Of a stretch of DNA of 64,000 bases, positions 1,292 through 44,139 are shown one piece after another (position 1 is the stretch's first letter; each line of letters opens with the position of its first letter). The notes under the pieces were generated by a model, which saw only the letters and a list, made by a program, of their open reading frames with translations, made no database searches and was not told where the DNA came from. Made by a program: the position numbers and the translations under genes. Location of the stretch: positions 275,899 to 339,898 of IMG/VR virus record IMGVR_UViG_3300028666_000022; one strand, 5' to 3'.

Positions 1292-1394
1292 GAAATGGAA
1301 TTTCATATAAATACTGAAAAAATAATTGTAAAATATTGATCTTTTTCGTAAATATTTAGTATTTATATTTGTAGTTCAAATAAACAACATTGAT

Positions 1395-1556
1395 ATGGGA
1401 TATTCAAAAGACAAAGACAGGACATTAGGCATAAGACTTGATGTAGATCTCAAAAAGAGATATTTAAAATTTATTAGTGATAATGGATATTCATTATCGA
1501 AAAGAATAAGAGTTTTATTGGAAAATGATATGAAAAATGAAAAAAACAGTATTTGA
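1395..1556 (+). CDS. Small ribbon-helix-helix-like protein (53 aa, not in ORF track)
   Basis: MGYSKDKDRTLGIRLDVDLKKRYLKFISDNGYSLSKRIRVLLENDMKNEKNSI*; beta strand plus two helices; TATATTTG at 1364-1371; overlaps next gene. Confidence 0.65.
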   Translation: MGYSKDKDRTLGIRLDVDLKKRYLKFISDNGYSLSKRIRVLLENDMKNEKNSI

Positions 1557-4134: not shown

Positions 4135-4143
4135 TATAAATAC
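4135..4143 (-). promoter_or_regulatory. Putative late promoter GTATTTATA (representative; see findings for all copies)
   Basis: Same motif lies ~14-55 nt upstream of at least 15 mostly structural gene starts, always in coding orientation. Confidence 0.7.
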
Positions 4144-4195
4144 TTGATAAAATAATATATGATATGTTTAATTATAAAATTATTTTGTTTATGTT

Positions 4196-4227
4196 TGTAA
4201 CAAAATTAAATTATTTTCGTATATTTG
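4196..4227 (+). promoter_or_regulatory. ECF-like promoter TGTAAC-N16-CGTA overlapping host-type TATATTTG
   Basis: TGTAAC 4196-4201, CGTA 4218-4221; heads the plus-strand accessory block. Confidence 0.6.
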
Positions 4228-4255
4228 AATATTAAGAATTAAATAAAAAAATATT

Positions 4256-4546: not shown

Positions 4547-4582
4547 ATATTTGGTTTTATTTGTAAATAATATAATTAAAAT

Positions 4583-4614
4583 TTTAACAAATTTAAATTA
4601 TTGTCGTATATTTG
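4583..4614 (+). promoter_or_regulatory. ECF-like promoter variant TTTAAC-N16-CGTA overlapping TATATTTG
   Basis: Same architecture as 4196. Confidence 0.5.
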
Positions 4615-4657
4615 AATATTAATAATTTAAAAACATTAAAAATGAATTTATACAAAA

Positions 4658-9430: not shown

Positions 9431-9727
9431 ATGAATAATTTAATTAATCTAAAAAATATTACTATGAAAGATGATATCATGTATTTAATTGATGTTGTGG
9501 ACAGCCTAAATGATTGTATTTGGGGAGAAGAAGGTGAGAATGAAGAAAATTTTGAACACATGTTCAGTCTTAGATATTCACCTATATTTCAAATGATTTA
9601 TTTTGATGACACACTATTGTGGCATTCTGAATTTGAAGATGAATATGAAGATTTAGAAGAATTTTGTAAAGATAGGCTTCGCGAAATAAATGAAAATTTA
9701 ATATCATTAAATGATTTATTGGAATAA
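9431..9727 (+). CDS. Acidic hypothetical protein, paralog of the next gene
   Basis: Shares IWGEEGENEENFE and YEDLEEF with 9740-10015; start 9431 or 9464. Confidence 0.6.
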   Translation: MNNLINLKNITMKDDIMYLIDVVDSLNDCIWGEEGENEENFEHMFSLRYSPIFQMIYFDDTLLWHSEFEDEYEDLEEFCKDRLREINENLISLNDLLE

Positions 9728-9739
9728 AACATAAATAAT

Positions 9740-10015
9740 ATGGAAAATTTAGTAGAAATAATAGATAACCTCAATACAAGTATTTGGGGAGAAGAAGGTG
9801 AGAATGAAGAAAACTTCGAATATAATTTCAATTATAGATATTATACTTCATTCGAATTGATATTTTTTGATGATATACTTTTGTGGAATTCAAATAATGA
9901 CGAAAGAGAATGGATAGAAGAACTTGATGATTACGAAGACTTAGAAGAATTTATAAAAAAAGAATATTGTAAATTGAGCGAAAAGATGTTAACTTTTAAA
10001 AATTTTATTAAATAA
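9740..10015 (+). CDS. Acidic hypothetical protein, tandem paralog
   Basis: Shares IWGEEGENEENFE and YEDLEEF with 9431-9727. Confidence 0.6.
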   Translation: MENLVEIIDNLNTSIWGEEGENEENFEYNFNYRYYTSFELIFFDDILLWNSNNDEREWIEELDDYEDLEEFIKKEYCKLSEKMLTFKNFIK

Positions 10016-12283: not shown

Positions 12284-12554
12284 AATATATGAAATTATGA
12301 ATAAATTAAAAAATTTCTATGAAAATTATTTAGAATATTATTTTTTCGTATTCAAAATATATTTAAAACTATTTTTAATATCAGCATCAGGATTTTTTAT
12401 TTTACAAGGAATAGCTTCATTTTTATTATTTTATGAACAAATATATTCAGAAGAAATAAATTTTAATAATTTAATGATTGGTCCTACTATTTTTGGAATT
12501 ATGATTTGTTTTATTTTTGGAATGCAAATACATCGTTATAATAAATTGAATTAA
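12273..12554 (+). CDS. Small 2-TM membrane protein
   Basis: Two hydrophobic segments. Confidence 0.5.
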   Translation: MEYKIYEIMNKLKNFYENYLEYYFFVFKIYLKLFLISASGFFILQGIASFLLFYEQIYSEEINFNNLMIGPTIFGIMICFIFGMQIHRYNKLN

Positions 12555-15121
12555 TGATACACAAACCCACCAAAGAACAAGAAAAAATATTTACTTATAT
12601 TGAAAAACGACCTGAAAATCTATTAATTGAAGCATACGCCGGAGCTGGGAAAAGTTCCACTGTTGTTGAAGCAGTTAGGTTATTACCTAAAGATAAGTCA
12701 ATAACATTTTTAGCTTTTAATAAACACATTCAAGAAGAATTAAAAACTAAATTACCTGAACATGTGAGGTGTTATACAACATATGGTTTAGGAAATGCAG
12801 CAATTAAAAGAAAATATGGTGATAAGATAGTGTTCGATGAATTCAAAGCAGACAAAATAATTCAAAAGAAAGCTAAAAATTGGGATTTAAATAACGAATT
12901 TAAAAATGAAGAGAAAATAAATTATTATCTAAATAATATAAAAAAATTAGTTAATCTCTGTAGATTAACATTAACAGTAAAGCCAGATTACATACCGTTT
13001 TTAGCTGAAAGACATGATATCAATAATTTAAGTAAACCAAAAGATATTAAAAGAGTTCTAAAAGTACTAGATGAAATGACTATAGATAGAACTTCTTATG
13101 ATTATACCGATATGGTTTATTTACCAGCAGTTGATAATTCAATTTGGATGTTTCCTCAAGATTATGTAATCGTGGATGAATGTTTACCAAAAGAAACATA
13201 TATTTTAACAACAGAAGGTAAAATACAAATAAATTTATTGTGTACTAATTATAATAAAAATATAAAAATACCTAATGTTATTACATATAATGAAACTATA
13301 AATAAATTTGAAGAAAAGAAAATAAATTGTGTTTGGTGTAATGGGATTAAGGATGTTTATTGTGTTAAATTAGGCACTAAAAGAAAATTGTATGCTACAG
13401 TTAATCATAAATTTTTAACATTAAATGGATGGAAAAGATTAGATGAACTAAAAATTGGAGATGCTATACTATCGAATTATCATAATCAACCATATCATTC
13501 GATATTAAATAATATACAAAAAGAAATTTTTGTTGGTTCAATTCTTGGTGATGGACATTTATATAGTTTAAGTAAAAATATAGGAAGAATTAGTGTTATT
13601 CATGGTGAAAAACAAAAGAAATATATTGAATGGAAAGGACAATTTTTTAATTCTAAAATAAATAAAATTGAAAAAAATGGTTATAGTCAAAAGGTTGCAT
13701 ATACTTTTCGAACATTAGGATATTATTTTGATTTAAATATCGAAGATAGTATAAAATCAATAACTCCACAATCATTAGCAATTGCTTGGATGGATGATGC
13801 TAATTTAAGTAAATTTGAAAATTGTTCAAAATTATATTCATTGGCTACAACAAAAAACTATGTCCAATTATTAAATAAAACAATATTTAATAATTGGAAT
13901 ATCGAATCTAGTGTTAGAACACAAAAAAGTTCATCAACAAAAAAAGAATATTATTATTTAGAATTTAATAAAAAAAATACCGAAAAAATATCTGAATTAA
14001 TTTCACCGTATATTCATGAATCAATGAAATATAAAATTTTAAAAAAACATTATAATAATATTAATAATGAAAATTGGAATATTATTGATGATAAATACTC
14101 AAATTTAGGTTGTATTGTTGTTACTGATGAATATAAATTTCATAAAACCGAAAAAACATATGACATGAGTGTTGAGGATAATCATAATTTTATTATTACT
14201 TCGAAAAAAGATAGTAAAAATAGAGGTGGAGCGAGTAATAATGGAATTGTTGCACATAATTGTCAGGATACTGGGTCAGCACAACAAAAAATAATTGAAA
14301 AAATATTAAAAAAAGATAAATTAACTGGTAAAATTTTAGGTAGATTAATCTCGGTGGGTGATAAATTTCAAAACATATATGCATTTAATGGTAGTAGTGA
14401 TAAATGTTTTGAATGGTTCAGAAATTTTCCTAATACAAAAGTTTTACCTCTTTCATATTCTTTTAGGTGCGCCAAAAACATCATTTTAAAAGCAAATGAA
14501 ATTGTACCAGATATTAAAGCATTGGATGATGCACCTGATGGTATTGTTAGAGATGGTGATGTATTAAGTGAAGCTCAGAGTGGTGATTTTGTTTTATGTA
14601 GAACAACAATGCCATTGGTTAAATTATTTTTTCAATTCTTATTACAACATAAAAAAGCAATTATTAAAGGCAGTGATATTGGAGTGCATCTTATTGAATT
14701 AATTGGTAAAATTAATAATATTAAACAATTAATTAGTTTTTGGGAAAAAGAATTAGATGATTATAGTAATGATTTAAAATCAAAAGGTATTTTAAATCCA
14801 GATGAACATAGTGGTTACATTGCTTTAGCTGATAAAGTTTCAACATTATTATTTCTAGCTAAACTTTCAAATAGTATCGAAGATCTTAAAGATAAAATAA
14901 GAACAATATTTAGTGATGAAATTGAGGGTATTGTGCTCAGTTCTATCCACAAAATCAAGGGGTTAGAGTCAAATAGAGTATTTATTGTTAGACCAGATTT
15001 ATTACCGTTAAAAACTGCAAGAGGATGGCAAAAAGATCAGGAAATGAATTTATCATATGTCTCAATAACGAGGGCCAAATTAGAATTAATTTATGATAGA
15101 GAATGGTCAGATTTAAAATAA
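12554..15121 (+). CDS. UvrD/Rep-family SF1 helicase containing an intein
   Basis: Walker A AYAGAGKS; Walker B VIVDE|CQD split by intein; VGDKFQNIYAF, SFRC, SSIHKIKGLE, YVSITRAK. Confidence 0.92.
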   Translation: MIHKPTKEQEKIFTYIEKRPENLLIEAYAGAGKSSTVVEAVRLLPKDKSITFLAFNKHIQEELKTKLPEHVRCYTTYGLGNAAIKRKYGDKIVFDEFKADKIIQKKAKNWDLNNEFKNEEKINYYLNNIKKLVNLCRLTLTVKPDYIPFLAERHDINNLSKPKDIKRVLKVLDEMTIDRTSYDYTDMVYLPAVDNSIWMFPQDYVIVDECLPKETYILTTEGKIQINLLCTNYNKNIKIPNVITYNETINKFEEKKINCVWCNGIKDVYCVKLGTKRKLYATVNHKFLTLNGWKRLDELKIGDAILSNYHNQPYHSILNNIQKEIFVGSILGDGHLYSLSKNIGRISVIHGEKQKKYIEWKGQFFNSKINKIEKNGYSQKVAYTFRTLGYYFDLNIEDSIKSITPQSLAIAWMDDANLSKFENCSKLYSLATTKNYVQLLNKTIFNNWNIESSVRTQKSSSTKKEYYYLEFNKKNTEKISELISPYIHESMKYKILKKHYNNINNENWNIIDDKYSNLGCIVVTDEYKFHKTEKTYDMSVEDNHNFIITSKKDSKNRGGASNNGIVAHNCQDTGSAQQKIIEKILKKDKLTGKILGRLISVGDKFQNIYAFNGSSDKCFEWFRNFPNTKVLPLSYSFRCAKNIILKANEIVPDIKALDDAPDGIVRDGDVLSEAQSGDFVLCRTTMPLVKLFFQFLLQHKKAIIKGSDIGVHLIELIGKINNIKQLISFWEKELDDYSNDLKSKGILNPDEHSGYIALADKVSTLLFLAKLSNSIEDLKDKIRTIFSDEIEGIVLSSIHKIKGLESNRVFIVRPDLLPLKTARGWQKDQEMNLSYVSITRAKLELIYDREWSDLK
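13181..14260 (+). mobile_element. Intein (360 aa) with LAGLIDADG endonuclease in the helicase Walker B motif
   Basis: Starts CLPKET, block B ATVNHKF, LAGLIDADG-like GSILGDG and AIAWMDD, ends GIVAHN|C. Confidence 0.92.
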
Positions 15122-15472: not shown

Positions 15473-16018
15473 ATGACATGTATTATTGGTTATATTGATA
15501 GAATTAATAATAAAGTAATACTTGGTGGGGATTCAGCAAGTATTACTAATAAACAAATTATGATAAGAAAAACACCCAAAGTATTTAAAAATGGTAATTT
15601 CATATTTGGTTCTTCAGGTAGTATTAGATTAAGTCAATTATTGGAAAATTCATTTAAACCACCTAAAATAGAAATAGATACTATTCTTGAGTATATGTGT
15701 ATAACATTCGTTAATGAAATAAGAAATTGTTTAAGAGAAGGTGGCATATTAAATATTAATAATAATATCGAAACAATGGAAAATGATATTATTGTTGGAT
15801 ATAAAAATAGATTATTTACAATATATTCAGATTTTACTGTTTTTGAAAATATAAATGATTTTATCTCAATTGGAAGTGGTTTAGAATATGCGTTAGGTTC
15901 ATTACATACTACAAAAGATGATAACATTACCATTGAAAATAAAATATTGTTAGCATTAGGAGCAGCATCTAAATATTGTACTGGAGTTTCTGAGCCATTT
16001 AACTTAATTAGTACTTAA
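15473..16018 (+). CDS. HslV-like Ntn-hydrolase (Thr peptidase)
   Basis: MTCIIG (Thr after Met removal), GGDS, KVF, SIGSGLEYALG. Confidence 0.8.
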   Translation: MTCIIGYIDRINNKVILGGDSASITNKQIMIRKTPKVFKNGNFIFGSSGSIRLSQLLENSFKPPKIEIDTILEYMCITFVNEIRNCLREGGILNINNNIETMENDIIVGYKNRLFTIYSDFTVFENINDFISIGSGLEYALGSLHTTKDDNITIENKILLALGAASKYCTGVSEPFNLIST

Positions 16019-16028: not shown

Positions 16029-16322
16029 ATGAAGTGGATAGTTAATATAGAGAATAAACCAAATCAAAGAATTGTTGTGAATTTCAATCCTTTGGAAGAA
16101 CAATTAATTTTTAATGGTGAATATAAACCCAAGAATAGAGAATGGATTGTATTTAGTACTGAAAAATATTCAATGAAGCTTGATTTAGAAAAAATCCAAG
16201 AATTATTGTTTATAACATATGAGAATTTAAAAATACGCCTCGAACAATATGAGATTCTTAATGAAGGTTTTAAATTAATTAATTTAATTGAGATAAAAGA
16301 AGAGGAAGAAGAATTAGGATAA
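16029..16322 (+). CDS. Hypothetical protein
   Basis: 97 aa ORF. Confidence 0.55.
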   Translation: MKWIVNIENKPNQRIVVNFNPLEEQLIFNGEYKPKNREWIVFSTEKYSMKLDLEKIQELLFITYENLKIRLEQYEILNEGFKLINLIEIKEEEEELG

Positions 16323-16568
16323 TTTATAAAATTTATTCACTACTACAATATAATCGTTAACAAAAAAGAACTGAAAATTTTCAGTTCTATCTACAAGATG
16401 AGCGAAACGTATATTTTTGACATCAAAACTCATTTTATACATCGAAAATTTAGCTAAAAAATCTAATATTTCAAAAGCTAAATCTTCAATAATTATTTCA
16501 TCTTCTTTAACACCAGTTGATTTAAGATAGTTAATTTGATCACTAATTACTGTTTCAAAATTTTTCAT
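16314..16568 (-). CDS. Hypothetical protein
   Basis: 84 aa ORF. Confidence 0.5.
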   Translation of the reverse strand: MKNFETVISDQINYLKSTGVKEDEIIIEDLAFEILDFLAKFSMYKMSFDVKNIRFAHLVDRTENFQFFFVNDYIVVVNKFYKLS

Positions 16569-16624: not shown

Positions 16625-17056
16625 TTAATCATCCTCGCCATCTTCTTTTGATTTTTTTGCTTTTAGTTCTTCGTTTTCTTTTATTAACATATCAACTTTT
16701 TCATCATAAATAGCTTTAACCATTTTATGTGTTTCTTTATTTGTTTGACTTAATATATTAAAAGCATCCTCACCAATTTTCTCTCCAACTTCCCTTCTAA
16801 TTTCTTTATGATCTTCAATATTCTCATCATGTTTTCTTTGAATTTCAGTTCTTATTTCCGCTTCAGTTTTTTCTCCAATTTTTTTTATTGAAGAAATATA
16901 AAAAATTAACAATGGAGTACCTAAACCAATTGCAAAAGAAGCAATTAATTTATTTGTTTCACTAGTAAATGTCATTAATATCGTAAATACAATATAACCT
17001 AATATTGTGGAGGTTATAAGTATTGCAAGAAATGATCTTATAAATATTTTTAACAT
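16625..17056 (-). CDS. 2-TM membrane protein with charged coiled-coil tail (holin-like topology)
   Basis: Two N-terminal hydrophobic helices, highly charged C-terminus; overlaps upstream gene. Confidence 0.6.
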   Translation of the reverse strand: MLKIFIRSFLAILITSTILGYIVFTILMTFTSETNKLIASFAIGLGTPLLIFYISSIKKIGEKTEAEIRTEIQRKHDENIEDHKEIRREVGEKIGEDAFNILSQTNKETHKMVKAIYDEKVDMLIKENEELKAKKSKEDGEDD

Positions 17057-17490
17057 AAAAATCTTATTAATAGCAAAAAGTATAATGTTATTGATATTGC
17101 AAATAAATATTTCAATTCAACTTTAGGAAAAAATCTAATTACAGTAAAATCAACTAAAATTATTAAAAATGACATTGAAAATAATTCAGTTAAATGCCTA
17201 TTTGAACATATTTTATTATATTCTCCAAGTGGATGACTTGCTAAAAGAAATTGAAATAATAAATATTCAAAAATAAACATCATAAATCCAATAACAGCTA
17301 ATTTATTTAATGAATCATTTAGATAATATACTAAATATCCAGAAACAGTTAATAACATCGTATATAACAACACATAAAAAAAGCAGTTCCAAAACACACT
17401 AGGAACTGCTCTAGTTATGTAAGTTTCTATTAATGCTCCGAATAGAAATATAATATAAATTATACTGTGTTTTTTTAATTCGTTAAGCAT
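17050..17490 (-). CDS. 4-5 TM integral membrane protein
   Basis: Almost entirely hydrophobic helices; starts 6 nt after the peptide gene stop. Confidence 0.65.
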   Translation of the reverse strand: MLNELKKHSIIYIIFLFGALIETYITRAVPSVFWNCFFYVLLYTMLLTVSGYLVYYLNDSLNKLAVIGFMMFIFEYLLFQFLLASHPLGEYNKICSNRHLTELFSMSFLIILVDFTVIRFFPKVELKYLFAISITLYFLLLIRFLC

Positions 17491-17496
17491 AGATAA

Positions 17497-17646
17497 CTAT
17501 TTTGTTGGTTGTGGCGGTGGTGGAGGTTGTACTATACCATCCTTATTTTTTGATTTTGGTGGTTGTGGCGGTGGTGGGGGTTGTACTATACCTGCTTGAG
17601 CCTTTAAACCAAATAAATTTAGAATATAATTCCAGATTTTTTTCAT
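17497..17646 (-). CDS. 49-aa proline-rich peptide precursor with duplicated core (not in ORF track)
   Basis: MKKIWNYILNLFGLKAQA-GIVQPPPPPQPPK-SKNKD-GIVQPPPPPQPTK*; late-type motif at 17702-17709. Confidence 0.75.
   Translation of the reverse strand: MKKIWNYILNLFGLKAQAGIVQPPPPPQPPKSKNKDGIVQPPPPPQPTK
17500..17592. repeat. 39-nt direct repeat x2 (period 54 nt) encoding the peptide cores
   Basis: 17500-17538 and 17554-17592 differ at 2 positions (one synonymous); GC-rich island in AT-rich DNA. Confidence 0.9.
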
Positions 17647-17888
17647 TATTAATTGTTTTTTAAATAAAGTTATTTTGTAATTATTGAGATTGTATTTTCT
17701 CTATAAATAAATAGTAAAAATAATCCTAAAGAGCAATGGTTAGATAAGATTTTTTTATAGAAATTAGATAATTATTTTAGTATGTTTAAAAACATTATAA
17801 AAAATTATAAAAATGTGGATTATTAGATAAGTGAAAGTGTGTTAATTACTTAAGATATGTTAGTGTATAATTATTTATGAATATGATT

Positions 17889-18296
17889 TTATTTATTTTT
17901 AATAATATATGCTGTGTTATTATTGTTTTTTTCGTCAGCATCATCACCTAGCGCACCACTTGTATTATTAAGTGTTTTTATTGTTAATTTTTCTCTGTTA
18001 ATGGCATCTATCGAACTACTTAACGAACCTATTGATGTGTTTATTTTACCAAGTTCTTGATAAAATAACGTATTTTGACTCTTCTGATCTTCAAACATCT
18101 GTCTATAATTGTTTTCAGTTAAATTTATTTTTGGAACTACAACTAATTGATAAAATCCATAAAAAATACCTAAAATAGTACCAATTGTAAGAAGAAAACT
18201 TTTTACAGTGAAAACAATCTGAGTATTAGCACTAATCTTAAATCCTCCCTCTTCTTGCACATCATCACTAGATTTTGCTATAATTTTCTTTTTCAT
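17889..18296 (-). CDS. Single-TM protein with coiled-coil
   Basis: FLLTIGTILGIFYGFYQLVVV followed by heptads. Confidence 0.55.
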   Translation of the reverse strand: MKKKIIAKSSDDVQEEGGFKISANTQIVFTVKSFLLTIGTILGIFYGFYQLVVVPKINLTENNYRQMFEDQKSQNTLFYQELGKINTSIGSLSSSIDAINREKLTIKTLNNTSGALGDDADEKNNNNTAYIIKNK

Positions 18297-18323: not shown

Positions 18324-18785
18324 TTAATTGTTTGAATTATATACACAATTTTCCCATTTTATTGTCACTTTTATTGACTCCATTGAAGTCTCGTACCAAT
18401 ATATTACTGTTGGTGTTACATCAATAACAGCAGTGAATCCATTAGGGAATTGTTCGTTAGTTACTTCAACATTATCTATGAATACCCTTGCATTTGATAT
18501 CCATGTTTTTACTGTTTTATTATAATATGTTGATTTACTGATTAGAATTAATTCGTACCTGTATTTAGGTAATTCTGAAAGGGTTTTTTGTTTTTGTTTA
18601 AAATCTCGATGTGTTAATATTGTTTGTCTAGTTACATATGATGATATAGATACGTTGGTTTCATTCGAAATATCATGTCTCCATGTGCCATAATCTACAT
18701 ATATTTTCTTTTTACCATAAGACTGTGCCTCTGTAGAAAAACACGTAAATAATGTCGCTAAAATAAGAAATAATATAAATCTCAT
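18324..18785 (-). CDS. Secreted/periplasmic protein with Sec signal peptide
   Basis: MRFILFLILATLFTCFSTEA|QS; late motif at 18803-18811. Confidence 0.6.
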   Translation of the reverse strand: MRFILFLILATLFTCFSTEAQSYGKKKIYVDYGTWRHDISNETNVSISSYVTRQTILTHRDFKQKQKTLSELPKYRYELILISKSTYYNKTVKTWISNARVFIDNVEVTNEQFPNGFTAVIDVTPTVIYWYETSMESIKVTIKWENCVYNSNN

Positions 18786-18929
18786 GGCATTAATATTATA
18801 TCTATAAATACTTTCGTAACGATAAAGAATATTAAATTTTATAAAAAATTAGAGAAAATAGTTTTATATGATTAATTATTTGAAAATCCAAGAGATTGGA
18901 GTAAATTTAAAAAAGATTTTAGACTTTAC

Positions 18930-19534: not shown

Positions 19535-19897
19535 ATGAAAGTTTTAATCAATTTAATTATTGAAAATTTAACAGATGACTTATTAAAAAATAAATATAAG
19601 TCATCTGTTAATAAAAATAAATTTACTGGACATTGTTATGTTGCTACAGAAACATTATATCACTTACTTGATGATAATGAGAAAAAAAATTATATACCAG
19701 CAATATTAAAAATTAATAATGATACCCATTGGTTTTTAAAAAATAAAATAACTGGTGAAATATTTGATATAACAAAAAATCAATTTAATTATAGTTTAGA
19801 TTATAGTAAATCAATAAATAAAGCTTTTTTAACAAAAAATCCATCAAAAAGAACATTAATATTAATAAATAGAATATATGAAAAAATTAATTTATAA
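19535..19897 (+). CDS. YunG-like / papain-fold-like small protein
   Basis: GHCYVATE...HWFL...FDIT..QF gives a candidate Cys-His-Asp triad; start re-placed to MKVLIN. Confidence 0.5.
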   Translation: MKVLINLIIENLTDDLLKNKYKSSVNKNKFTGHCYVATETLYHLLDDNEKKNYIPAILKINNDTHWFLKNKITGEIFDITKNQFNYSLDYSKSINKAFLTKNPSKRTLILINRIYEKINL

Positions 19898-21788
19898 CAA
19901 AACAATACTATTATTTTTAGATACTAATGATATTGAAACATTAGAAAAGGGTGATTTAAAAAAAATAAAAGATGATTATCTGCTTATATATGATAATTGT
20001 GTTATTTTTAGTTATTTCGATATAAAATATCATAAAAATATAATTAAAGATAAAATAAATAAATTGAAGTTTATTAAGCAAACTAAAATAAATGCAAGAG
20101 AATGTAATATTGTAAAAATAGACAACGTTGAAAAAAATAAATTTTTGAATGAAAATCATCTTCAAGAAACCGATAGATCTCAAATATTTTATGGAGCATA
20201 TTATAATAATGAATTACTTGCTGTTATGACATTTGATAATTCAAGAAAAATGAATGGTGGTGTTGAAAAAGATGAAAATGAATATGATTTATCAAGATTT
20301 GCAATTAAAATGGGTTATATTATTGTTGGTGTATTTAATAAGATGCTAATGACATTTATTAATGATTATTCGCCAAATAAAATTATAACATTTGCTGATT
20401 TAGATTTGGTTAATAGAGAAAATAATATTTATTTACACAATAATTTTAAATTATGTAAAGTAATTAACCCTGATTTTAGAATATATTTAAAAAATAAAAA
20501 TAATATCTTTCATAAATTTACTTATGGTAATAAGTTTATGAAAGATGGTAAAATTTCTGACGAAAAGAAAGAAGATGTAAGAGAAAATATGATAAAATTA
20601 TGGAACTGTGGAAAAATAAAATATGAATTATTAATAATTAACAAAAAAATAATATATGGTTTTATTTACATAATAAAAAATAAAACTAATGGTAAAATAT
20701 ATATTGGTCAAACAACTAGAAGTTTTACTAGAAGATTATGGGAATATAGAAGCGCATATAAATATAATAATTTTCACAATCAATATCTTGCTAATGCATT
20801 CAATAAATATGGTTGGGATAATTTTGAAATTTCTGTTATAGATAATGCATTAACTGTTGAAGAATTAAATGAAAAAGAAATCAATTACATTAACAAATAT
20901 AATTCAAATAATAGAGAATTTGGATATAATTTAGAGGCAGGTGGTAATAATTCTCTTCCTAGTTCAGAAACACTTGAAAAAATGTCAATTTCGCATCAAG
21001 GTGTTGTTCAAAGTGATGAATGGGTTGAAAAGAGAATTGCTAAAGCTGGTACTGAAGATGCAAAGAAATATGGAAAAGCTAAAACAGAAGAAGAAAAATT
21101 AAAATTAAGTTTAACCTCAACTAAATTTTGGGAAGGAAAAACCAGAGACGAAGAAACTAGAAGAAAGATAAGTGAAACAAAAAAGAAAAATGGGTTATCG
21201 GAAAAACAAAAAGAATTATCATGTGTACGTGTTTGTAAAGTAAATTCAAAAACTAATGAGATTGTAGAAACATTTGAATCAGTATCGGAAACTGCTAGAC
21301 GTGAAAATACTAGTCAGGCAACTATCATTAGAAGATGTTCTGGTGAAACAAAAAATGTTGGCGATTATTTTTATTATTATGAATCAGATTTTTCGAATAA
21401 TATTGTAAGAGAATTTAAATCAACCGAACGCAAAAGTTTGAATAATTTTACTGAAGAAGAATTACATAAAATTTATAATGAACACATTAATGATGGAGTT
21501 TCAGTTAGAGAATTATGTACTAAATATAATCTAATTTATAGTACTCTTTCTAATTATATCAGTAAAAAAAGAAATCCACTTAATTTAGATTCTAAATATT
21601 GGGCTGTTTGTAAGAAAACCAATAAAAAATTTGAAGATTATTTAAATAAATCTGGAGTATTAACAAGACATATTCAAGAAATATATGCTGAAGAGAATTT
21701 AGAATCAAAATTTTCACGAAAGAAAATTGAATTAGAATCTGGACACTTTTGGTACGCTAGATTTTTTGATTTTATTGAAATTAAATAA
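19878..21788 (+). CDS. Mom/GNAT-like domain fused to GIY-YIG homing endonuclease with NUMOD-like and HTH modules
   Basis: FLNENHLQ...YDLSRFA...IITFAD...LWNCG; GFIYIIKNKTNGKIYIGQT; RDEETRRKISET; FESVSETAR. Confidence 0.75.
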   Translation: MKKLIYNKTILLFLDTNDIETLEKGDLKKIKDDYLLIYDNCVIFSYFDIKYHKNIIKDKINKLKFIKQTKINARECNIVKIDNVEKNKFLNENHLQETDRSQIFYGAYYNNELLAVMTFDNSRKMNGGVEKDENEYDLSRFAIKMGYIIVGVFNKMLMTFINDYSPNKIITFADLDLVNRENNIYLHNNFKLCKVINPDFRIYLKNKNNIFHKFTYGNKFMKDGKISDEKKEDVRENMIKLWNCGKIKYELLIINKKIIYGFIYIIKNKTNGKIYIGQTTRSFTRRLWEYRSAYKYNNFHNQYLANAFNKYGWDNFEISVIDNALTVEELNEKEINYINKYNSNNREFGYNLEAGGNNSLPSSETLEKMSISHQGVVQSDEWVEKRIAKAGTEDAKKYGKAKTEEEKLKLSLTSTKFWEGKTRDEETRRKISETKKKNGLSEKQKELSCVRVCKVNSKTNEIVETFESVSETARRENTSQATIIRRCSGETKNVGDYFYYYESDFSNNIVREFKSTERKSLNNFTEEELHKIYNEHINDGVSVRELCTKYNLIYSTLSNYISKKRNPLNLDSKYWAVCKKTNKKFEDYLNKSGVLTRHIQEIYAEENLESKFSRKKIELESGHFWYARFFDFIEIK

Positions 21789-21856: not shown

Positions 21857-23266
21857 TTACTTTTTAATCTCTATGAAGTCAAAAAACTTAGCATACCAGA
21901 AATGACCAGTTTCTAACTCAATTTTCTTTCTAAGGTATTTTGATTCTAAATTCTCTTCAGGATATGTTTCTTGAATATGTCTTGTCAATACTCCAGATTT
22001 ATTTAAATAATCTTCAAATTTTTTATTGGTTTTCTTGCAAACAGCAATATAATTAGAATCTAAGTCAAGTACATTTTCTTTTTTATTTTTCTTTTCAATA
22101 TATGATAATAATATTGAAAATCTTATTGAATATTTTTTAGATAATTCTCTTATTGATATAAGAGAATTCATGTGTTCATTATACATATCTAATAATTCAT
22201 TATCTGTAAATTCTTCTAATTTTTTAAATATATTAGATTTGAAATCTTTTAATTCGTTATTTAGAAAATCACATTCATAACACCAATAATATTCACCTTT
22301 ATTTTTTGATATACCTAAACATTTTCTTAATATTGCTTCATATGATAAATTATCTGAATTTAATCTACCAGCATCCGCTAATGATTTAAATTTTTCTACA
22401 ATTTCATTATTTTTATTAATTTTTAAAACTGGTTTAGATACTTTATTTATTCTTTTCTCAATCCATTCTTTATTTTGTTTAATATCTTTTCTTGCTAAAG
22501 ATAATTTTAATTTTGTTTCTAAACTAGCAAGAGAGTTTTTACCACCATTTTCAATATTATAACCAAATTCTCTAATATTTGATTTATATTTATTAATATA
22601 ATTGATTTCTTTTTCATTTAGTTCATCAATATTTGTTGCATAATCAATGATATTGAACTCAAAATTATTTAAATTATGTTTATTAAATGCATGATATAGT
22701 ATATGATCTTCATTATTTTTTGCTTTTAATATATGTTCATATAATCTGTCTTTCACTCTTATACTTTGACCGACATATTTCTTATTATTTAGTTTATTGA
22801 TTATTAGATAAATATGTCCGAATTCATCTAAAGTAATATCTAATTTAATATTTACATTAATATTATGTTTTTTCATTACCCAAATATTTGTTTTTTCTGA
22901 AGATGATGTTAAATTATTATTAAAATCATAATTATAACCAAATTCTTCAATATTTGATTTATAAATGTTAGTATGAACAATTTTTTTCAAATCTAACTCA
23001 CTAATATTTGATGCACTATCAATGATAGCAAACTCAAAATTATTAATCCCATATTCATTAAATGCATCACATATTGGATGATTTTCACCATTATTTGCTC
23101 TTCGTATATGTTCGCCAAATCTCTTTCTAACTTGAGTACTTTGTCCAACATATTTTTTATTGTTTATTTTATTTGTAAGTAAATAAATATGTCCAAATTC
23201 ATTCATGATTATATTTTTACTAACATTTACTATGATTTCATGTTTTTCAATTAACCAAGTTTCCAT
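21857..23266 (-). CDS. Homing endonuclease with two tandem GIY-YIG domains
   Basis: GHIYLLTNKINNKKYVGQS and GHIYLIINKLNNKKYVGQS; FKSLADAGR; shared C-terminal domain. Confidence 0.8.
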   Translation of the reverse strand: METWLIEKHEIIVNVSKNIIMNEFGHIYLLTNKINNKKYVGQSTQVRKRFGEHIRRANNGENHPICDAFNEYGINNFEFAIIDSASNISELDLKKIVHTNIYKSNIEEFGYNYDFNNNLTSSSEKTNIWVMKKHNINVNIKLDITLDEFGHIYLIINKLNNKKYVGQSIRVKDRLYEHILKAKNNEDHILYHAFNKHNLNNFEFNIIDYATNIDELNEKEINYINKYKSNIREFGYNIENGGKNSLASLETKLKLSLARKDIKQNKEWIEKRINKVSKPVLKINKNNEIVEKFKSLADAGRLNSDNLSYEAILRKCLGISKNKGEYYWCYECDFLNNELKDFKSNIFKKLEEFTDNELLDMYNEHMNSLISIRELSKKYSIRFSILLSYIEKKNKKENVLDLDSNYIAVCKKTNKKFEDYLNKSGVLTRHIQETYPEENLESKYLRKKIELETGHFWYAKFFDFIEIKK

Positions 23267-26612: not shown

Positions 26613-26738
26613 TTTATTAAATTCTTGTAACTAATAATCTAATTTTTATATAAATACATCTGCTTTGCGAAAAAGTATAAAAAATAATAAAATTTCTTGT
26701 TTTATTAAAAATTTATACTTATATTCTCACCATTATTT

Positions 26739-28646
26739 TTATAGTAAAAACTTATCTATTGCAGATGATAATTTATTATCTTCTTCTTTTAAATAAACAC
26801 CATTTTTATTTACATAACTTTCTTCAAAACTAAAATTTCCTTTATTTGGAAATAAATATGCTCCGGGAGTACTTGGTGTAGAAACTAAATCAAATGCTAT
26901 TAATTCAAAATCATTTTGAACATAATTTTCACCTTGTATTTCTTTTAATGTTCCAACTCCCCTTGATGATATTCCAATTCTGATTTTGTTTTGTAGATAT
27001 AAAACTATTTTATCACCAATGACTGAAACAACACCATACTTAATATAACCGGGAGATACAATTATTTTTAATTGACCAAACAAAACATTTTCTTCTTTAC
27101 CTTTTCCCCACCACATTTTTGTTATTAAATGTGATATGTTTTGTAAGGAAACTACAGATGAATTACCAGTCCAATGTGCTTTACCATTTACTTTAACTAA
27201 GAAATTACCATTTTTAACTCTAACACAAGCAATGTTATCATTAAAATCAATTTCAGTAACTTTAATAAATCTTTTATCTAAATAAATGTGTTTAGTTTTT
27301 GATATGTTTAAATTATATTGTATTTGACTATTCTCTGCTTTAATCAATCTATTTGTTTCGAGAGTTTCATTAATATATTCAATTGTACCATCAGATAAAA
27401 CAACTTCTTTTTTTACTATTTTTTTATCGATAATATTTCTATCTTTGGGTTGATATGTTGTAATTGTACCACTACTACCAGTTTTAATTAAGATCTCATG
27501 TAAATCTTCAATTAGTTGTCTTGATGTTGAAAAAACAGATTTTTTATTATTTAGTTTTCCATTTTTTTCAACATAATCAATGTTCCTGCCATCACCCAAC
27601 CAGAACCAATGAAATAATATTTTTAATAAATCCGAAGATGCTTGTTTTAATTCTATTGGAATATATTTATTATGTGAATGTCCTAATATATATAGATAAT
27701 TATATAATCTAGCATCATTAATATGATATTGACATTTACCATCATCATGCTCGTCTTTCCAAAATTTAAATGGTAATTTTTTTAATAAATTTTCAATAAG
27801 AATCTTTTTTTCTTTATTTTTTTGTGTTATAATAACACTATAACCACTTAATTTATATTGATTTGATTTAGCACCAGTACTATGACCTTCAGCTAAATAT
27901 ATTCCCATAAAAGCAAACCAATCTTCTGATTTAATTTTTATTGGTGTAGTATAACGTTCAATTAAATCATGTTTTGAATTAAAACTTAACGTATTCTTAT
28001 CTACTCCTTCTAAAGTAAAATATTCATTATAATTACCTTGCCATTCAGCAGTTTTTAATATTTTATATTTTCCTGATGAAAGAACATTGTTTAGATTATT
28101 ATAAATATCTTTAGCATAATAATATTCTCTTTTGCCTTTAGAGTTTTCTATTAAAAATCTATGATTTTCTGTTACAGTTAAATCGATTGAATTACTTAAA
28201 AATTTATACATTTTACCTTGATATGGTGTATATATTTTTTTATCTATTTTTTGAATTTCAATTTGATTAGTTTCTGTATTAAGTGTTAATATTTCTTCAT
28301 TCTCTGAAATATCTTTAAACCATTTCCATCCATCTTTAGTGCATATTTTAGATTCTGAAGCATTCACGCAATCTGGATGATCAGCTTCATTTACAGCACA
28401 ATTAGTATCAATTAGTTTTTGATATTCTATAACTTGAGGAACTAAAACATCTTTTGGATAAATTCTACCATTTTTATTTTTCACACCCCATTTTTGAAGT
28501 ATGCAATCTATTAAGACTGGTTCATTAGGTTTAAGTTCAAAACCTTCTTTAATTAATTGTGGATTTAAGTCTGAAGTAATAAAACCTGAATCCGACTCAA
28601 TAAGAATTCCAAAACCCGTCTCATTTGCTTTTAATATATTGCCCAT
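26739..28646 (-). CDS. Prohead protease (T4 gp21-like) containing an intein
   Basis: KNKNGRIYP, EADHPD|SSVVSLQNISH, GISSRGVG, FDLVSTPSTPGA; ~232 aa after splicing. Confidence 0.92.
   Translation of the reverse strand: MGNILKANETGFGILIESDSGFITSDLNPQLIKEGFELKPNEPVLIDCILQKWGVKNKNGRIYPKDVLVPQVIEYQKLIDTNCAVNEADHPDCVNASESKICTKDGWKWFKDISENEEILTLNTETNQIEIQKIDKKIYTPYQGKMYKFLSNSIDLTVTENHRFLIENSKGKREYYYAKDIYNNLNNVLSSGKYKILKTAEWQGNYNEYFTLEGVDKNTLSFNSKHDLIERYTTPIKIKSEDWFAFMGIYLAEGHSTGAKSNQYKLSGYSVIITQKNKEKKILIENLLKKLPFKFWKDEHDDGKCQYHINDARLYNYLYILGHSHNKYIPIELKQASSDLLKILFHWFWLGDGRNIDYVEKNGKLNNKKSVFSTSRQLIEDLHEILIKTGSSGTITTYQPKDRNIIDKKIVKKEVVLSDGTIEYINETLETNRLIKAENSQIQYNLNISKTKHIYLDKRFIKVTEIDFNDNIACVRVKNGNFLVKVNGKAHWTGNSSVVSLQNISHLITKMWWGKGKEENVLFGQLKIIVSPGYIKYGVVSVIGDKIVLYLQNKIRIGISSRGVGTLKEIQGENYVQNDFELIAFDLVSTPSTPGAYLFPNKGNFSFEESYVNKNGVYLKEEDNKLSSAIDKFLL
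27162..28370 (-). mobile_element. Intein (403 aa, LAGLIDADG) in prohead protease
   Basis: Starts CVNASES, VTENHRF, GIYLAEG and WLGDG, ends HWTGN|S. Confidence 0.9.
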
Positions 28647-38806: not shown

Positions 38807-38885
38807 TTCTATAAATTTTTATAATTTATTATAAATACTAAAATTTTTGTCAAAAATCAATACTTTTATAATAAATACAATAAAT

Positions 38886-41627: not shown

Positions 41628-42305
41628 ATGAACATAATTATAAATAAAGAAGAAAGAGATTACTTAGAAAAATCAGTCTTAAGAAGATTTACTATTGGAT
41701 CACAATTATATGGAACAAACAATTCAGAATCAGATACTGATATTCTTTCAATTTATGAAACATCTGAATTAGAATTAATGTCAGGTTTACCTAATTTTCA
41801 TCAATTTCAGTGGAAAGATACTGAAAATAATATTGATTGGTTATATACATCAGAATTACAATTTTGGAAAAACTTTTATTCTGGTGATTCGATCATAAAT
41901 GCTGATATTGTTTTATTTACTGATTTAATTAAAGATGATTTAAAATTATCATATTGTAGGACATATAAGGTAATTAAAGCATATATTGGATTTGCTAAAA
42001 GAGATTTGAAACATATTAATAAAGATAAAAGTAAATTATTTCATGCTAATAGAGGATTATATTGTGCTCAAGAACTTTTAGAAGGAAGATTACCATTATT
42101 ATCAGAAATACAAAAATTAGCTTTAAAAGATGGTTATTTCCAAGAAAATTTAGGAGATTTAATATATACCGAAAATTTATTAAGAACAAAACTTAATAAA
42201 TTATATGATGATAATAAAATAGTAACATATTATATTGAAAAATGTGGTAATATGCTATTTGATAAAATGTTTGAAGCAAATAATATTAAAGAATTTAAAT
42301 ACTAA
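41628..42305 (+). CDS. Pol-beta superfamily nucleotidyltransferase (RlaP/Nuc-transf-like)
   Basis: IGSQLYGTNNSESDTD; helical C-terminus AYIGFA..KLFHA.R. Confidence 0.8.
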   Translation: MNIIINKEERDYLEKSVLRRFTIGSQLYGTNNSESDTDILSIYETSELELMSGLPNFHQFQWKDTENNIDWLYTSELQFWKNFYSGDSIINADIVLFTDLIKDDLKLSYCRTYKVIKAYIGFAKRDLKHINKDKSKLFHANRGLYCAQELLEGRLPLLSEIQKLALKDGYFQENLGDLIYTENLLRTKLNKLYDDNKIVTYYIEKCGNMLFDKMFEANNIKEFKY

Positions 42306-42494
42306 TGAAAATAAATTACGATATATTATATAATAAATATGTTAAGAATTGTAAAAAGAATCCTAAATCATTTAGTGATTTCATTAGAATATATACTAAA
42401 ATAATTTTTCATCGACAAATAATAAGGCCACAAATAATTTGGTGGCAAGAAACATATAAAATAATGAATACAAAATATTATAAAAATTATTAAT

Positions 42495-42725: not shown

Positions 42726-42729
42726 AATT

Positions 42730-44127: not shown

Positions 44128-44139
44128 TGAAAATATATT

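What the first reader, a model, noticed from the sequence alone, without database searches (positions are those of the whole stretch)
16625..17709. Unannotated peptide + membrane protein + holin-like cassette: candidate phage peptide-signalling or lysis-control system
Seen: a 49-aa ORF missed by the ORF track (17497-17646, minus). It has an 18-aa basic/hydrophobic leader ending in A-Q-A, then two near-identical cores GIVQPPPPPQP(P/T)K separated by SKNKD. The cores are a 39-nt repeat with one synonymous change, consistent with coding constraint. A 4-5 TM protein with no soluble enzymatic domain starts 6 nt after the peptide stop and overlaps a 2-TM protein with a charged coiled-coil tail. A late-type motif lies upstream (17702-17709). 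Established: AxA is the signal peptidase I consensus; peptide genes next to receptor genes are typical of quorum-sensing cassettes (Agr, arbitrium), and T4 lysis inhibition regulates a holin. Inference: an exported multicore Pro-rich peptide is sensed by the multi-TM protein, which gates the holin-like partner. That would be a late, membrane-level communication circuit unlike the cytoplasmic TPR receptor of arbitrium. The leader's hydrophobic stretch is short, so export is not certain.
Basis: partly seen in the sequence, partly recalled or inferred. Interest (0 to 1): 0.85.

Follow-up and report, generated by a model that had tools for sequence, protein, structure and literature searches.

The report
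Proline-rich peptide plus two-membrane-protein phage module
A tiny proline-rich, positively charged peptide gene sits in front of two membrane-protein genes, and the same trio recurs in two other, unrelated phage-like sequences, so it is a real but uncharacterised module that more likely helps burst the cell than sends signals.

Summary
The 49-aa ORF, its duplicated GIVQPPPPPQP(P/T)K core, the 146-aa multi-TM protein and the 143-aa 2-TM protein are all present as described. The only two homologues of the 143-aa protein found in several billion proteins lie in the same layout of small Pro-rich ORF, multi-TM protein and 2-TM/long-helix protein. One is a crAss-like phage contig (L005) and the other a 1.2-kb metagenome contig (L006).

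The export and signalling reading is not supported. The L005 peptide has no leader, because its polyPro run starts at residue 5. The helix matching the window's "leader" sits at the C-terminus in L006. No AxA site, Cys or receptor-type domain is conserved. The "late motif" at 17702-17709 is a chance-level octamer. The phage's real late-type motif is GTATTTATA, and its nearest copy is at 18803-18811.

In L005 the trio overlaps an M23 peptidase gene among late structural genes. My best reading (about 0.4) is a late, translationally coupled, holin-type lysis module with a cytoplasmically made cationic Pro-rich accessory peptide. Rivals are an EF-P-dependent polyPro translational throttle and a non-lysis membrane function. 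The family has three known members and matches nothing in Pfam, PHROGs, NCBIfam, PADLOC or PDB.

The parts
17497..17646 (-). 49-aa cationic (+6), 27% Pro, Cys-free peptide gene. It has an N-terminal interfacial/amphipathic helix (residues 1-18) followed by two copies of the core GIVQPPPPPQP(P/T)K. Its stop is TAG.
   Evidence: Syntenic Pro-rich +6 ORFs occur in L005 (9488-9580) and L006 (88-210). The sense frame is conserved with different Pro codons, while the antisense frames are not conserved.
17553..17592 (-). First copy of the 40-nt core-encoding direct repeat, a GC-rich island in a 25% GC genome.
   Evidence: family D1, 95% identity.
17499..17538 (-). Second copy of the 40-nt core-encoding direct repeat.
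17050..17490 (-). 146-aa integral membrane protein with 4-5 TM helices and a predicted N-in topology. It has no soluble domain and starts 6 nt after the peptide stop, in the same frame.
   Evidence: AF2 with 3 sequences, pLDDT 69, helices 2-27, 36-56, 60-85, 97-120, 126-145. Homologues are L005 9561-10007 (34% identity) and L006 207-587 (26%). No family or fold match was found.
16625..17056 (-). 143-aa protein with an N-terminal 2-TM hairpin (N-in, C-in by the positive-inside rule) that continues into a helix of about 85 residues, charged and probably cytoplasmic and coiled-coil forming. It carries the invariant motif QKExHKMxKAIYDE[KR] and overlaps the 146-aa gene by 7 nt.
   Evidence: AF2 pLDDT 79, helices 2-30 and 33-140. 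Homologues are P0002 (E 4.9e-12) and P0003 (E 1.1e-5).
17702..17710 (-). It is a degenerate copy lacking the G and is not distinguishable from chance.
18803..18811 (-). GTATTTATA late-promoter-like site upstream of the 153-aa gene. It is the nearest credible late-type site from which the cassette could be co-transcribed (inference).
   Evidence: score 18.7, rank 12. No terminator-like site lies between it and the cassette.
18324..18785 (-). 153-aa protein with a strong N-terminal signal peptide. It is an upstream same-strand neighbour of unknown function and its membership of the module is uncertain.
   Evidence: No family hits.
17889..18296 (-). 135-aa single-pass (type II-like) membrane protein. 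It is an upstream same-strand neighbour and its membership is uncertain.
   Evidence: No family hits.
16314..16568 (-). 84-aa acidic soluble ORF immediately downstream on the same strand. It occupies the position that the M23 peptidase holds in L005 but is unrelated to it. Function unknown.
   Evidence: A terminator-like hairpin at 16388-16367 lies inside it.

Best explanation
The three genes form one conserved, translationally coupled late module that acts on the host cytoplasmic membrane. It has moved horizontally between a 340-kb T4-like jumbo phage (this window) and a crAss-like phage.

Most likely it is a holin-type lysis-control module. The 2-TM protein with a long charged cytoplasmic helix and the 4-5-TM protein would together form or time the membrane lesion that lets a cell-wall hydrolase act. 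The small peptide would be made in the cytoplasm, not Sec-exported. It would work as a cationic, Pro-rich accessory subunit at the membrane, either tuning the two membrane proteins or attacking the envelope once lysis starts, as the phiKT disruptin does.

Shown: the genes, their conservation as a trio, their tight overlaps, the predicted topologies, the adjacency to an M23 peptidase in L005, and the non-conservation of the leader. Inferred: late expression, the role in lysis, and what the peptide does.
For: 1. The trio is conserved. The only homologues of the 143-aa protein among 1.84 billion representatives both lie in the order small Pro-rich ORF, multi-TM protein, 2-TM/long-helix protein.
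2. The peptide is coding. The core VQPPPPPQPTK matches VIPPPPPPPTK in L005 (0 of 5000 composition-preserving shuffles reach the score). The codons differ, CCA/CCG/CCC in the window against CCT in L005, and the antisense translations are unrelated. All three peptides have net charge +6 and no Cys. The only run of five or more prolines in 13.8 kb of L005 is at the syntenic spot.
3. The genes are coupled. Between the two membrane-protein genes there is a 7-nt overlap in both the window (16625-17056 against 17050-17490) and L005 (10001-10480 against 9561-10007). Between the peptide and the multi-TM gene there is a 6-nt gap in the window, a 20-nt overlap in L005 and an ATGA overlap in L006.
4. There is a lysis link. 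In L005 the 159-aa gene overlaps a 158-aa Peptidase_M23 gene by 20 nt (Pfam E 6.2e-11, above cut-off; PHROG endolysin E 6.3e-7). That operon starts after a hairpin and lies among crAss capsid, ring and tail-fibre genes. A review states that crAss-like lysis genes lie within the late structural unit (PMC10136315).
5. The architecture fits the usual holin criteria, taken from my own knowledge of the holin literature: small size, at least one TMD, a highly charged hydrophilic C-terminus, and mosaic distribution between unrelated phages.
6. A lead from elsewhere. A similar 29-aa polyPro, Lys-rich ORF overlaps the start of the endolysin gene in a canonical lysis cassette with Rz/Rz1 in L019.
7. A small cationic peptide in a lysis cassette has precedent in phiKT gp28 (10.1101/515445).
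Against: No endolysin gene is adjacent in the window, and none was found among the roughly 50 window ORFs scanned.

The L005 M23 domain has Trp in place of the first zinc-ligand His, SWGID instead of HxxxD. It may therefore be a non-catalytic LytM-type domain or a virion protein rather than an endolysin.

Neither membrane protein matches any holin family in Pfam, PHROGs or NCBIfam or any fold in BFVD or PDB.

The family has only three members, and one of them sits on a 1.2-kb contig, so the association with lysis rests on a single locus. L019 is a single unreplicated case from a pattern search that also returned many spurious hits.

Late expression of the cassette is inferred only. Its own upstream motif is at chance level.
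Confidence: 0.4

Rival explanations
1. The polyPro ORF is mainly a translational throttle. Runs of 5-7 prolines stall ribosomes unless EF-P acts, so the first ORF of the operon would meter how many ribosomes reach the coupled membrane-protein genes. That would tie the amount, and hence the timing, of the toxic membrane proteins to the host's translation capacity. The peptide itself would be a by-product. This is compatible with the lysis reading.
For: PolyPro runs of P5 (twice) and P7 are the only such runs in the window and in L005. They sit in the first ORF of a tightly coupled gene set. In L005 the ORF follows a terminator-like hairpin and opens the operon. EF-P dependence of polyPro translation, and its use in leader and coupling control, are established (PMC5021804 and PMC11611912, as listed). 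The duplication in the window doubles the stall sites.
Against: L006 has only PIPPKP and no polyPro run. The distance from the Pro run to the downstream start varies, at about 30, 41 and 85 nt. The mRNA shows no structure beyond shuffled controls (z -0.21) and no Rfam match. Non-Pro features are conserved, namely PT(G)K, net charge +6 and the WN[YF][IL]xxLF helix shared with L006 at shuffle p about 0.002-0.009. That points to a function of the peptide itself.
Confidence: 0.15
2. The trio is a membrane module unrelated to lysis. Candidates are superinfection exclusion or immunity, an ion or small-molecule channel, or envelope remodelling during late infection. Its adjacency to M23 in L005 would then reflect a virion or tail enzyme neighbour.
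For: The window has no adjacent lysin. In the window the same-strand neighbours are a secreted protein and a single-pass membrane protein of unknown function. The L005 M23 domain lacks one zinc ligand and lies directly before tail-fibre genes. No holin family matches.
Against: The 20-nt overlap with the M23 gene argues for co-expression. The small size and charged tail are typical of holins. No PADLOC defence model matches. No positive evidence exists for any specific alternative.
Confidence: 0.25
3. The peptide is exported through its AQA leader and cut into two Pro-rich cores. These are sensed from outside by the multi-TM protein, which gates the holin-like partner, giving a late membrane-level communication circuit.
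For: A Pro-rich peptide gene is conserved next to the multi-TM gene. The window peptide has a basic N-terminus, a moderately hydrophobic stretch and an AQA motif. The cores are duplicated, as in multi-copy propeptides.
Against: L005 has no leader at all. L006 carries the matching helix at its C-terminus. AQA and the duplication are not conserved. Leader hydropathy is below the signal/TM range, with no 19-residue window above 1.6. The multi-TM protein has only short loops and no conserved His/Cys or receptor domain. The phages involved are lytic types, T4-like and crAss-like, in which lysis releases everything anyway.
Confidence: 0.05
4. The TAG stop of the peptide ORF is read through at some rate. 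The peptide and 146-aa ORFs are in frame, 2 codons apart. Read-through would give a 197-aa isoform of the membrane protein with a cationic Pro-rich N-terminal extension, comparable in logic to dual-start holin/antiholin pairs.
For: TAG ends only 3 of 61 ORFs here, and this one is in frame with a 148-codon continuation. The other two TAGs are followed by 6-7 codons only. Stop-codon read-through in late and lysis genes is reported for crAss-like phages (PMC10136315).
Against: No genome-wide TAG recoding is seen and the window has no suppressor tRNA. In L005 and L006 the two ORFs are in different frames and overlap, so a fusion is not a conserved feature.
Confidence: 0.05
5. The 49-aa ORF is not a gene. 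On this view the GC-rich repeat is a non-coding element, or it encodes the 53-aa hydrophobic ORF on the opposite strand (17502-17663, +).
For: The ORF is short and has no Shine-Dalgarno sequence. The antisense ORF is open and hydrophobic. The two repeat copies differ at only two positions, too few for a codon-level test.
Against: The sense-frame Pro run is conserved at the syntenic position with different codons, while the antisense translations are unrelated (a Val/Ala-rich hydrophobic stretch against poly-Arg). The antisense ORF needs a TTG start and runs against the local gene direction. No RNA family or structure signal was found. Most genes in this window also lack a Shine-Dalgarno sequence.
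Confidence: 0.03

Closest known systems
Class II-type holins with a long charged C-terminal tail, and two-gene holin/partner cassettes next to an endolysin (general holin criteria, from my own knowledge)
   Same: The proteins are small membrane proteins. The 143-aa family has two TMDs with predicted N-in/C-in topology and a highly charged hydrophilic C-terminus. The genes overlap. In L005 they sit directly before a cell-wall peptidase gene. The family is shared between unrelated phages.
   Different: No sequence or profile match to any holin family. The cytoplasmic helix of about 85 residues is unusually long. The partner has 4-5 TMDs. The window has no adjacent endolysin. Hole formation is untested.
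phiKT gp28 'disruptin', a phage-encoded cationic peptide that disrupts the outer membrane in lysis (10.1101/515445)
   Same: It is a small (30-56 aa), strongly cationic, Cys-free peptide without a lipoprotein signal, encoded with lysis-type genes. The window peptide has an amphipathic N-terminal segment (hydrophobic moment 0.51).
   Different: gp28 is described as an amphipathic helical, LL-37-like peptide. The peptides here are defined by a Pro-rich core, and the L005 peptide has no amphipathic helix. Sequence similarity to gp28 was not tested and function is untested.
Lambda Rz1-type o-spanins (Pro-rich small lysis proteins)
   Same: Small size, high proline content and association with lysis genes of phages that probably infect diderm hosts.
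   Different: o-Spanins are outer-membrane lipoproteins with a lipobox Cys, and none of the three peptides has a Cys. The coiled-coil partner here is predicted to be cytoplasmic, not periplasmic.
AgrD/AgrB and arbitrium AimP/AimR peptide signalling
   Same: A small peptide gene lies next to a possible partner gene. AgrD also has an N-terminal amphipathic helix and is handled by a multi-TM protein.
   Different: No AgrB or TPR/AimR domain. No conserved His/Cys in the multi-TM family. No Cys in the peptide for a thiolactone. The leader is not conserved. The phages are of lytic types.
Sec/YidC-monitoring arrest peptides (SecM, MifM, VemP, RAPP class; PMC7897499, PMC10987492) and EF-P-dependent polyPro control
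   Same: A short upstream ORF with a hydrophobic N-terminus (window only) and a proline-based stall-prone motif lies immediately before a membrane-protein gene.
   Different: The downstream gene is not Sec or YidC. No RBS-masking mRNA structure was found. The position of the Pro run and the presence of the hydrophobic segment are not conserved.

Membership tests
Arbitrium-type phage peptide signalling (AimP/AimR) | Propeptide with an N-terminal Sec signal, conserved among homologues | tested here: not met
   L005 has no leader. The matching helix is C-terminal in L006. The window leader has sub-threshold hydropathy. SignalP itself was not available.
Arbitrium-type phage peptide signalling (AimP/AimR) | Cytoplasmic TPR receptor/regulator encoded next to the peptide gene | tested here: not met
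   The neighbours are membrane proteins with no TPR or HTH domain.
Agr-type system (AgrD/AgrB) | AgrB-family multi-TM peptidase with conserved catalytic His and Cys | tested here: not met
   No Pfam hit to AgrB. The invariant columns of alignment A1 contain no His or Cys.
Agr-type system (AgrD/AgrB) | Cys (or Ser) in the peptide core for ring formation | tested here: not met
   None of the three peptides has a Cys.
Holin (functional class) | Small protein with at least one TMD and a charged hydrophilic C-terminus | tested here: met
   The 143-aa family has a 2-TM hairpin plus a charged helix (22 K/R and 26 D/E across the whole protein).
Holin (functional class) | Gene adjacent to an endolysin gene | tested here: inconclusive
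   Met in L005, which has an overlapping M23 peptidase, although that domain lacks one zinc ligand. Not met in the window. Unknown in L006.
Holin (functional class) | Membership of a described holin sequence family | tested here: not met
   No hit in Pfam, PHROGs or NCBIfam.
Holin (functional class) | Timed lethal permeabilisation of the cytoplasmic membrane | not testable with these tools
   Needs expression and complementation assays.
Two-component spanin (Rz/Rz1 type) | o-Spanin: lipoprotein signal with a lipobox Cys | tested here: not met
   No Cys in any of the three peptides.
Two-component spanin (Rz/Rz1 type) | i-Spanin: single N-terminal TMD with a periplasmic coiled coil | tested here: not met
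   The 143-aa family has two TMDs. The N-terminus carries +2 to +3 charge in all three, which predicts N-in and C-in. This is prediction only.
Disruptin (phiKT gp28-like) | Small cationic peptide without a signal sequence, encoded with lysis genes | tested here: met
   The peptides are 30-49 aa with net charge +6. L005 provides the lysis-type context. The definition is taken from 10.1101/515445.
Disruptin (phiKT gp28-like) | Predicted amphipathic helical structure over most of the peptide | tested here: inconclusive
   The window N-terminus has a hydrophobic moment of 0.51. L005 has none. The conserved part is a Pro-rich segment.
Disruptin (phiKT gp28-like) | Complements a spanin defect or disrupts the outer membrane | not testable with these tools
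   Needs a genetic assay.
Sec/YidC monitoring arrest peptides | Encoded upstream of a sec or yidC gene, with mRNA structure masking the downstream start | tested here: not met
   The downstream gene is an orphan membrane protein. The fold z-score is -0.21.
T4 lysis-inhibition set (T, RI, RIII) | Sequence relationship to T4 t, rI or rIII | tested here: not met
   No PHROG or Pfam hit for any of the six cluster proteins.

The most novel reading that the evidence does not exclude
The trio is a previously unrecognised three-component lysis system of phages that probably infect Bacteroidota. In it a ribosomally made polyproline/cationic peptide does double duty. Its EF-P-dependent translation meters production of a two-protein holin, so the lysis clock reads host translation capacity. 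The released peptide then attacks the outer membrane in place of a spanin.
Probability: 0.12. Interest if true: 0.8.

Novelty: new variant of a known kind. Interest (0 to 1): 0.55.

Why it matters
Lysis genes of crAss-like and other phages thought to infect Bacteroidota are poorly defined, and about 15% of phages lack a recognisable spanin (10.1101/515445). A conserved trio of small Pro-rich cationic peptide, 4-5-TM protein and 2-TM/long-helix protein, shared by a jumbo T4-like phage and a crAss-like phage, gives a concrete and testable candidate for missing lysis functions.

It also gives a rare example of a conserved gene under 50 codons that gene callers can miss. If the polyPro run acts as a translational throttle, it would link lysis timing to the host factor EF-P.

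If the module has nothing to do with lysis, it remains a new family of phage membrane proteins with an obligate micro-peptide partner.

Tried and rejected
Searches for relatives that found nothing beyond the three loci:
- Megablast of 6 kb around the cassette against INPHARED gave no match.
- Single-protein scans of IMG/VR returned only the source contig, as did the GIVQPPPPPQP DNA pattern.
- The word-indexed search with the 146-aa protein found nothing.
- Profile searches with A1 and A2 against 5.8 billion proteins found only the three loci and a 74-aa fragment (P0006) identical to part of the window's own 146-aa protein.
- P0003 against GTDB genomes and IMG/VR found nothing.
- tblastn of P0002 against INPHARED found nothing.

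Family and fold searches that found nothing significant: PHROGs, Pfam, PADLOC and NCBIfam; PDB sequence profiles; Foldseek against BFVD and PDB, all E above 0.09. The ESM Atlas gave only generic helical-bundle and coiled-coil look-alikes under 0.9. A sub-threshold NheB hit for P0002 (19 bits against a cut-off of 500) was not pursued.

Ideas rejected:
- T4-type TATAAATA as a late promoter for the cassette.
- An RNA element.
- TAG recoding of the genome.
- o-Spanin identity, because there is no Cys.

TAnnTTTG, the Bacteroidota -7 box, is not enriched in the window (111 found against 138 expected). Host assignment therefore rests only on indirect hints.

Only L019 looked comparable. Its small ORF is not present upstream of homologous endolysins in phages pAN and AH2, and L019 has no close relative in INPHARED.
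Full report
**What is in the sequence.** On the minus strand, an ATG ORF of 49 codons occupies 17497-17646. Its product starts with an 18-residue basic/hydrophobic segment ending AQA. Two copies of GIVQPPPPPQP(P/T)K follow, separated by SKNKD. The two copies are encoded by a 40-nt direct repeat (17499-17538 and 17553-17592) that is 95% identical, with one synonymous and one Pro/Thr difference. After the TAG stop and 6 nt comes a 146-aa ORF (17050-17490). It overlaps a 143-aa ORF (16625-17056) by 7 nt. Hydropathy gives four to five TM-like segments in the 146-aa protein. It gives two in the 143-aa protein, whose remaining 85 residues or so are highly charged. The Pro runs are not chance. In six-frame translation of the whole window (25% GC, 2.7% Pro), the only runs of five or more prolines are these two. 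Of 184 small ATG ORFs, this is the only one with at least 15% Pro and net charge of +5 or more.

**Genome context.** The window is the last 64 kb of a 339,898-bp IMG/VR contig. The contig is a distant T4-like jumbo phage. It carries a gp23-type major head protein, a portal, a prohead protease and a large terminase. The best capsid matches are uncultured huge phages, a Microcystis phage and Flavobacterium phages, at 32-43% identity. The window is riddled with homing endonucleases and an intein. The host is unknown. Start codons mostly lack Shine-Dalgarno sequences, and the cassette's closest relative sits in a crAss-like phage. Both facts hint at Bacteroidota, but the TAnnTTTG box is not enriched, so this is inference only. 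The cassette lies in a short minus-strand block between plus-strand early-type genes. The block reads: 153-aa secreted protein, 135-aa single-pass membrane protein, a 240-nt gap, then the peptide, the 146-aa, 143-aa and 84-aa ORFs.

**The 'late motif'.** TATAAATA is not clearly enriched in the window (45 found against 33.8 expected, reached by 5 of 100 shuffles). Read on the coding strand, the motif that precedes the capsid, portal, protease, terminase and other late genes is GTATTTATA followed by A/T-rich sequence. It has 11 copies against 4.06 expected, and 10 of the 11 lie within about 10-45 nt of a minus-strand gene start. The site upstream of the peptide reads TTATTTATA. That sequence occurs at chance frequency (17 against 14.2) and ranks 751st with a negative score on a matrix built from the true sites. 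The nearest credible site is at 18803-18811, before the 153-aa gene. No terminator-like hairpin lies between it and the cassette, so co-transcription as a late unit is possible but unproven. The mRNA around the small ORF folds no better than shuffled sequence (z -0.21), and no Rfam family matches.

**Relatives.** The module is very rare. Close-relative scans returned only the source contig. An exhaustive phmmer search of the 143-aa protein against 1.84 billion representatives found two homologues. They are P0002 (159 aa, 35% identity over the full length, E 4.9e-12) and P0003 (175 aa, E 1.1e-5). Profile searches added none.

**Both homologues sit in the same three-gene layout**. L005 is a 19.5-kb crAss-like contig with crAss capsid and ring proteins. 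After a terminator-like hairpin it carries a 30-aa ORF starting M-P-V-I, then seven prolines, then T-K and a Lys-rich tail. Next come a 148-aa multi-TM protein (34% identical to the window's), the 159-aa P0002, a 158-aa Peptidase_M23 and then tail-fibre genes. L006 is 1.2 kb. It carries a 40-aa ORF with PIDDPIPPKPTGK followed by a hydrophobic, basic helix. Then come a 126-aa multi-TM protein (26% identity) and P0003.

**What the three loci share and do not share.**
- Peptide properties: all three are Cys-free with net charge +6 and 15-27% Pro.
- Core similarity: VQPPPPPQPTK (window) against VIPPPPPPPTK (L005) is far beyond composition-matched shuffles (0 of 5000). The L006 Pro segment fits P-x-P-P-x-P-T only weakly (p about 0.07-0.09).
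- Codon evidence for coding: the Pro codons differ, mostly CCA in the window and CCT in L005. The antisense translations are unrelated. This is what a protein-coding constraint on the sense frame predicts.
- The helix: the window's N-terminal 'leader' matches the C-terminal helix of L006, IWNYILNLFGLK against LWNFLKILFAKK (p about 0.002-0.009). L005 has no such segment.
- Consequence: the helix is an optional module of the mature peptide and can sit at either end. It is not a conserved cleavable signal, and the AQA site and the duplication are private to the window.
- Gene junctions are tight everywhere: a 6-nt gap, a 20-nt overlap and an ATGA overlap for peptide to multi-TM gene, and an identical 7-nt overlap between the two membrane-protein genes in the window and L005.
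- In the window only, the peptide and 146-aa ORFs are in frame across a TAG, a stop used by 3 of 61 ORFs.

**Structure and family.** AF2 with the three-sequence alignments gives five long helices for the 146-aa protein (pLDDT 69). For the 143-aa protein it gives a helical hairpin continuing into one helix spanning residues 33-140 (pLDDT 79). N-terminal positive charge (+2 to +3 in all three homologues) predicts N-in and C-in, so the long helix with its invariant QKExHKMxKAIYDE[KR] motif should be cytoplasmic. Nothing significant matched in PHROGs, Pfam, PADLOC, NCBIfam, PDB sequences, BFVD or PDB folds. The language-model atlas gave only generic leads.

**Link to lysis.** The one informative context is L005. 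There the 159-aa gene overlaps by 20 nt a small M23 peptidase gene (Pfam E 6.2e-11; PHROG endolysin E 6.3e-7) with no signal sequence. A review states that crAss-like lysis genes lie inside the late structural transcription unit (PMC10136315). There is a caveat. Aligned with LytM, the L005 domain has Trp where the first zinc-ligand His should be, while HxH and the HL motif are kept. It could therefore be a degenerate LytM-type domain.

No lysin was found next to the cassette in the window, or among the other window ORFs scanned. T4-like phages do scatter their lysis genes (my own knowledge).

There is a further lead. A degenerate DNA scan for P5-[QP]-P-[TP]-K in IMG/VR returned, among many spurious hits, L019. 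There a 29-aa ORF with a short Ile-rich start, eight prolines and a Lys-rich tail overlaps the start of a lysozyme-like endolysin gene. A multi-TM protein and an Rz/Rz1-like pair follow it. The endolysin family is confirmed by Burkholderia phage AH2 gp42. The small ORF is absent upstream of that endolysin's homologues in two annotated phages. L019 has no close relatives to test, so this remains a single anecdote.

**Interpretation.** The evidence establishes a real micro-gene and a conserved, coupled trio of membrane-directed products shared by two unrelated phage lineages. I commit to a holin-type lysis-control module with a cytoplasmically made cationic Pro-rich accessory peptide, at confidence about 0.4. 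Within that reading, the peptide's role as a regulator of the membrane pair or as a disruptin-like envelope attacker (10.1101/515445) is open.

A non-exclusive rival is an EF-P-dependent polyPro throttle on the coupled downstream genes (0.15). It is weakened by L006, by the variable position of the Pro run and by the absence of mRNA structure. A membrane function unrelated to lysis remains quite possible (0.25). TAG read-through (0.05) and a non-coding repeat (0.03) are minor.

**Limits.** The family has three members, and one sits on a 1.2-kb contig. No signal-peptide predictor and no multimer prediction were available. There are no expression data. The host is unknown. Topologies are predictions.

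Noticed in passing
window 1306-1314, 4135-4143, 18803-18811, 26649-26657, 38830-38838, 49898-49906, 50543-50551, 54545-54553, 55675-55683, 63879-63887 (all minus strand): GTATTTATA followed by A/T-rich sequence lies 10-45 nt upstream of capsid, portal, protease, terminase and other minus-strand genes (11 copies against 4.06 expected). It is a candidate late promoter for this T4-like phage and differs from T4's TATAAATA when read on the coding strand.
   Followed up: partly
window 17491-17499: The peptide ORF ends in TAG, a stop used by 3 of 61 ORFs, and is in frame with the 146-aa ORF two codons later. Read-through would give a 197-aa fusion. No genome-wide TAG recoding was seen, the window has no tRNA genes, and the arrangement is not conserved in L005 or L006.
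   Followed up: yes
window 12554-15121; 35318-38806; 1537-3009; 19878-21788; 21857-23266; 38943-40526: There is a dense load of selfish elements. An intein with a LAGLIDADG endonuclease sits inside a UvrD-like helicase, an HNH-type insert sits in the portal gene, and several free-standing GIY-YIG/HNH homing endonuclease genes are present.
   Followed up: no
window 41628-47091: An RNA-repair-like cluster is present: a nucleotidyltransferase, polynucleotide kinase (E 1e-92), a phosphoesterase and a Thg1-like tRNA-His guanylyltransferase (E 5e-67).
   Followed up: no
window 15473-16018: An HslV-family peptidase-like gene (PHROG E 2.4e-20) lies just left of the cassette block.
   Followed up: no
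window 26739-28646: The 635-aa prohead-protease ORF also gives a weak hit to a thymidylate-synthase PHROG over residues 94-241 (E 2.7e-7). This may be an inserted or fused segment.
   Followed up: no
window 4190-4230 and 4580-4620: A near-identical block (..TCGTATATTTGAATATTAA..) is repeated upstream of the plus-strand genes at 4256 and 4658. It contains a TAnnTTTG box and may be an early promoter using a Bacteroidota-type -7 element. TAnnTTTG as such is not enriched in the window.
   Followed up: partly
L005 10461-10937: The M23 peptidase next to the homologous cassette has SWGID in place of the HxxxD zinc-binding motif. HxH is retained. It may be a degenerate LytM-type domain.
   Followed up: partly
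L019 9-98, 95-580, 577-993, 780-1508, 1165-1473: In a 63% GC viral contig, a 29-aa polyPro/Lys-rich ORF overlaps (ATGA) the start of a lysozyme-like endolysin gene. A multi-TM protein and an Rz/Rz1-like spanin pair follow. It resembles the L005 peptide in size and layout.
   Followed up: partly
L051, L103, L030, L021, L062 (positions as listed): A separate set of 65-75-aa ORFs has a 9-11-proline run near the N-terminus and a shared C-terminal LLG motif. In the contigs where a downstream gene was picked up (L051, L103) it is a portal-like gene of about 545 aa in a podovirus-like contig. This looks like an unrelated small polyPro protein family.
   Followed up: no
L006 539-1066: P0003 as called overlaps the preceding gene by 49 nt. 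Starting at its Met16 instead would give the ATGA overlap typical of the other junctions and a length of 160 aa, so the annotated start is probably too far upstream.
   Followed up: partly
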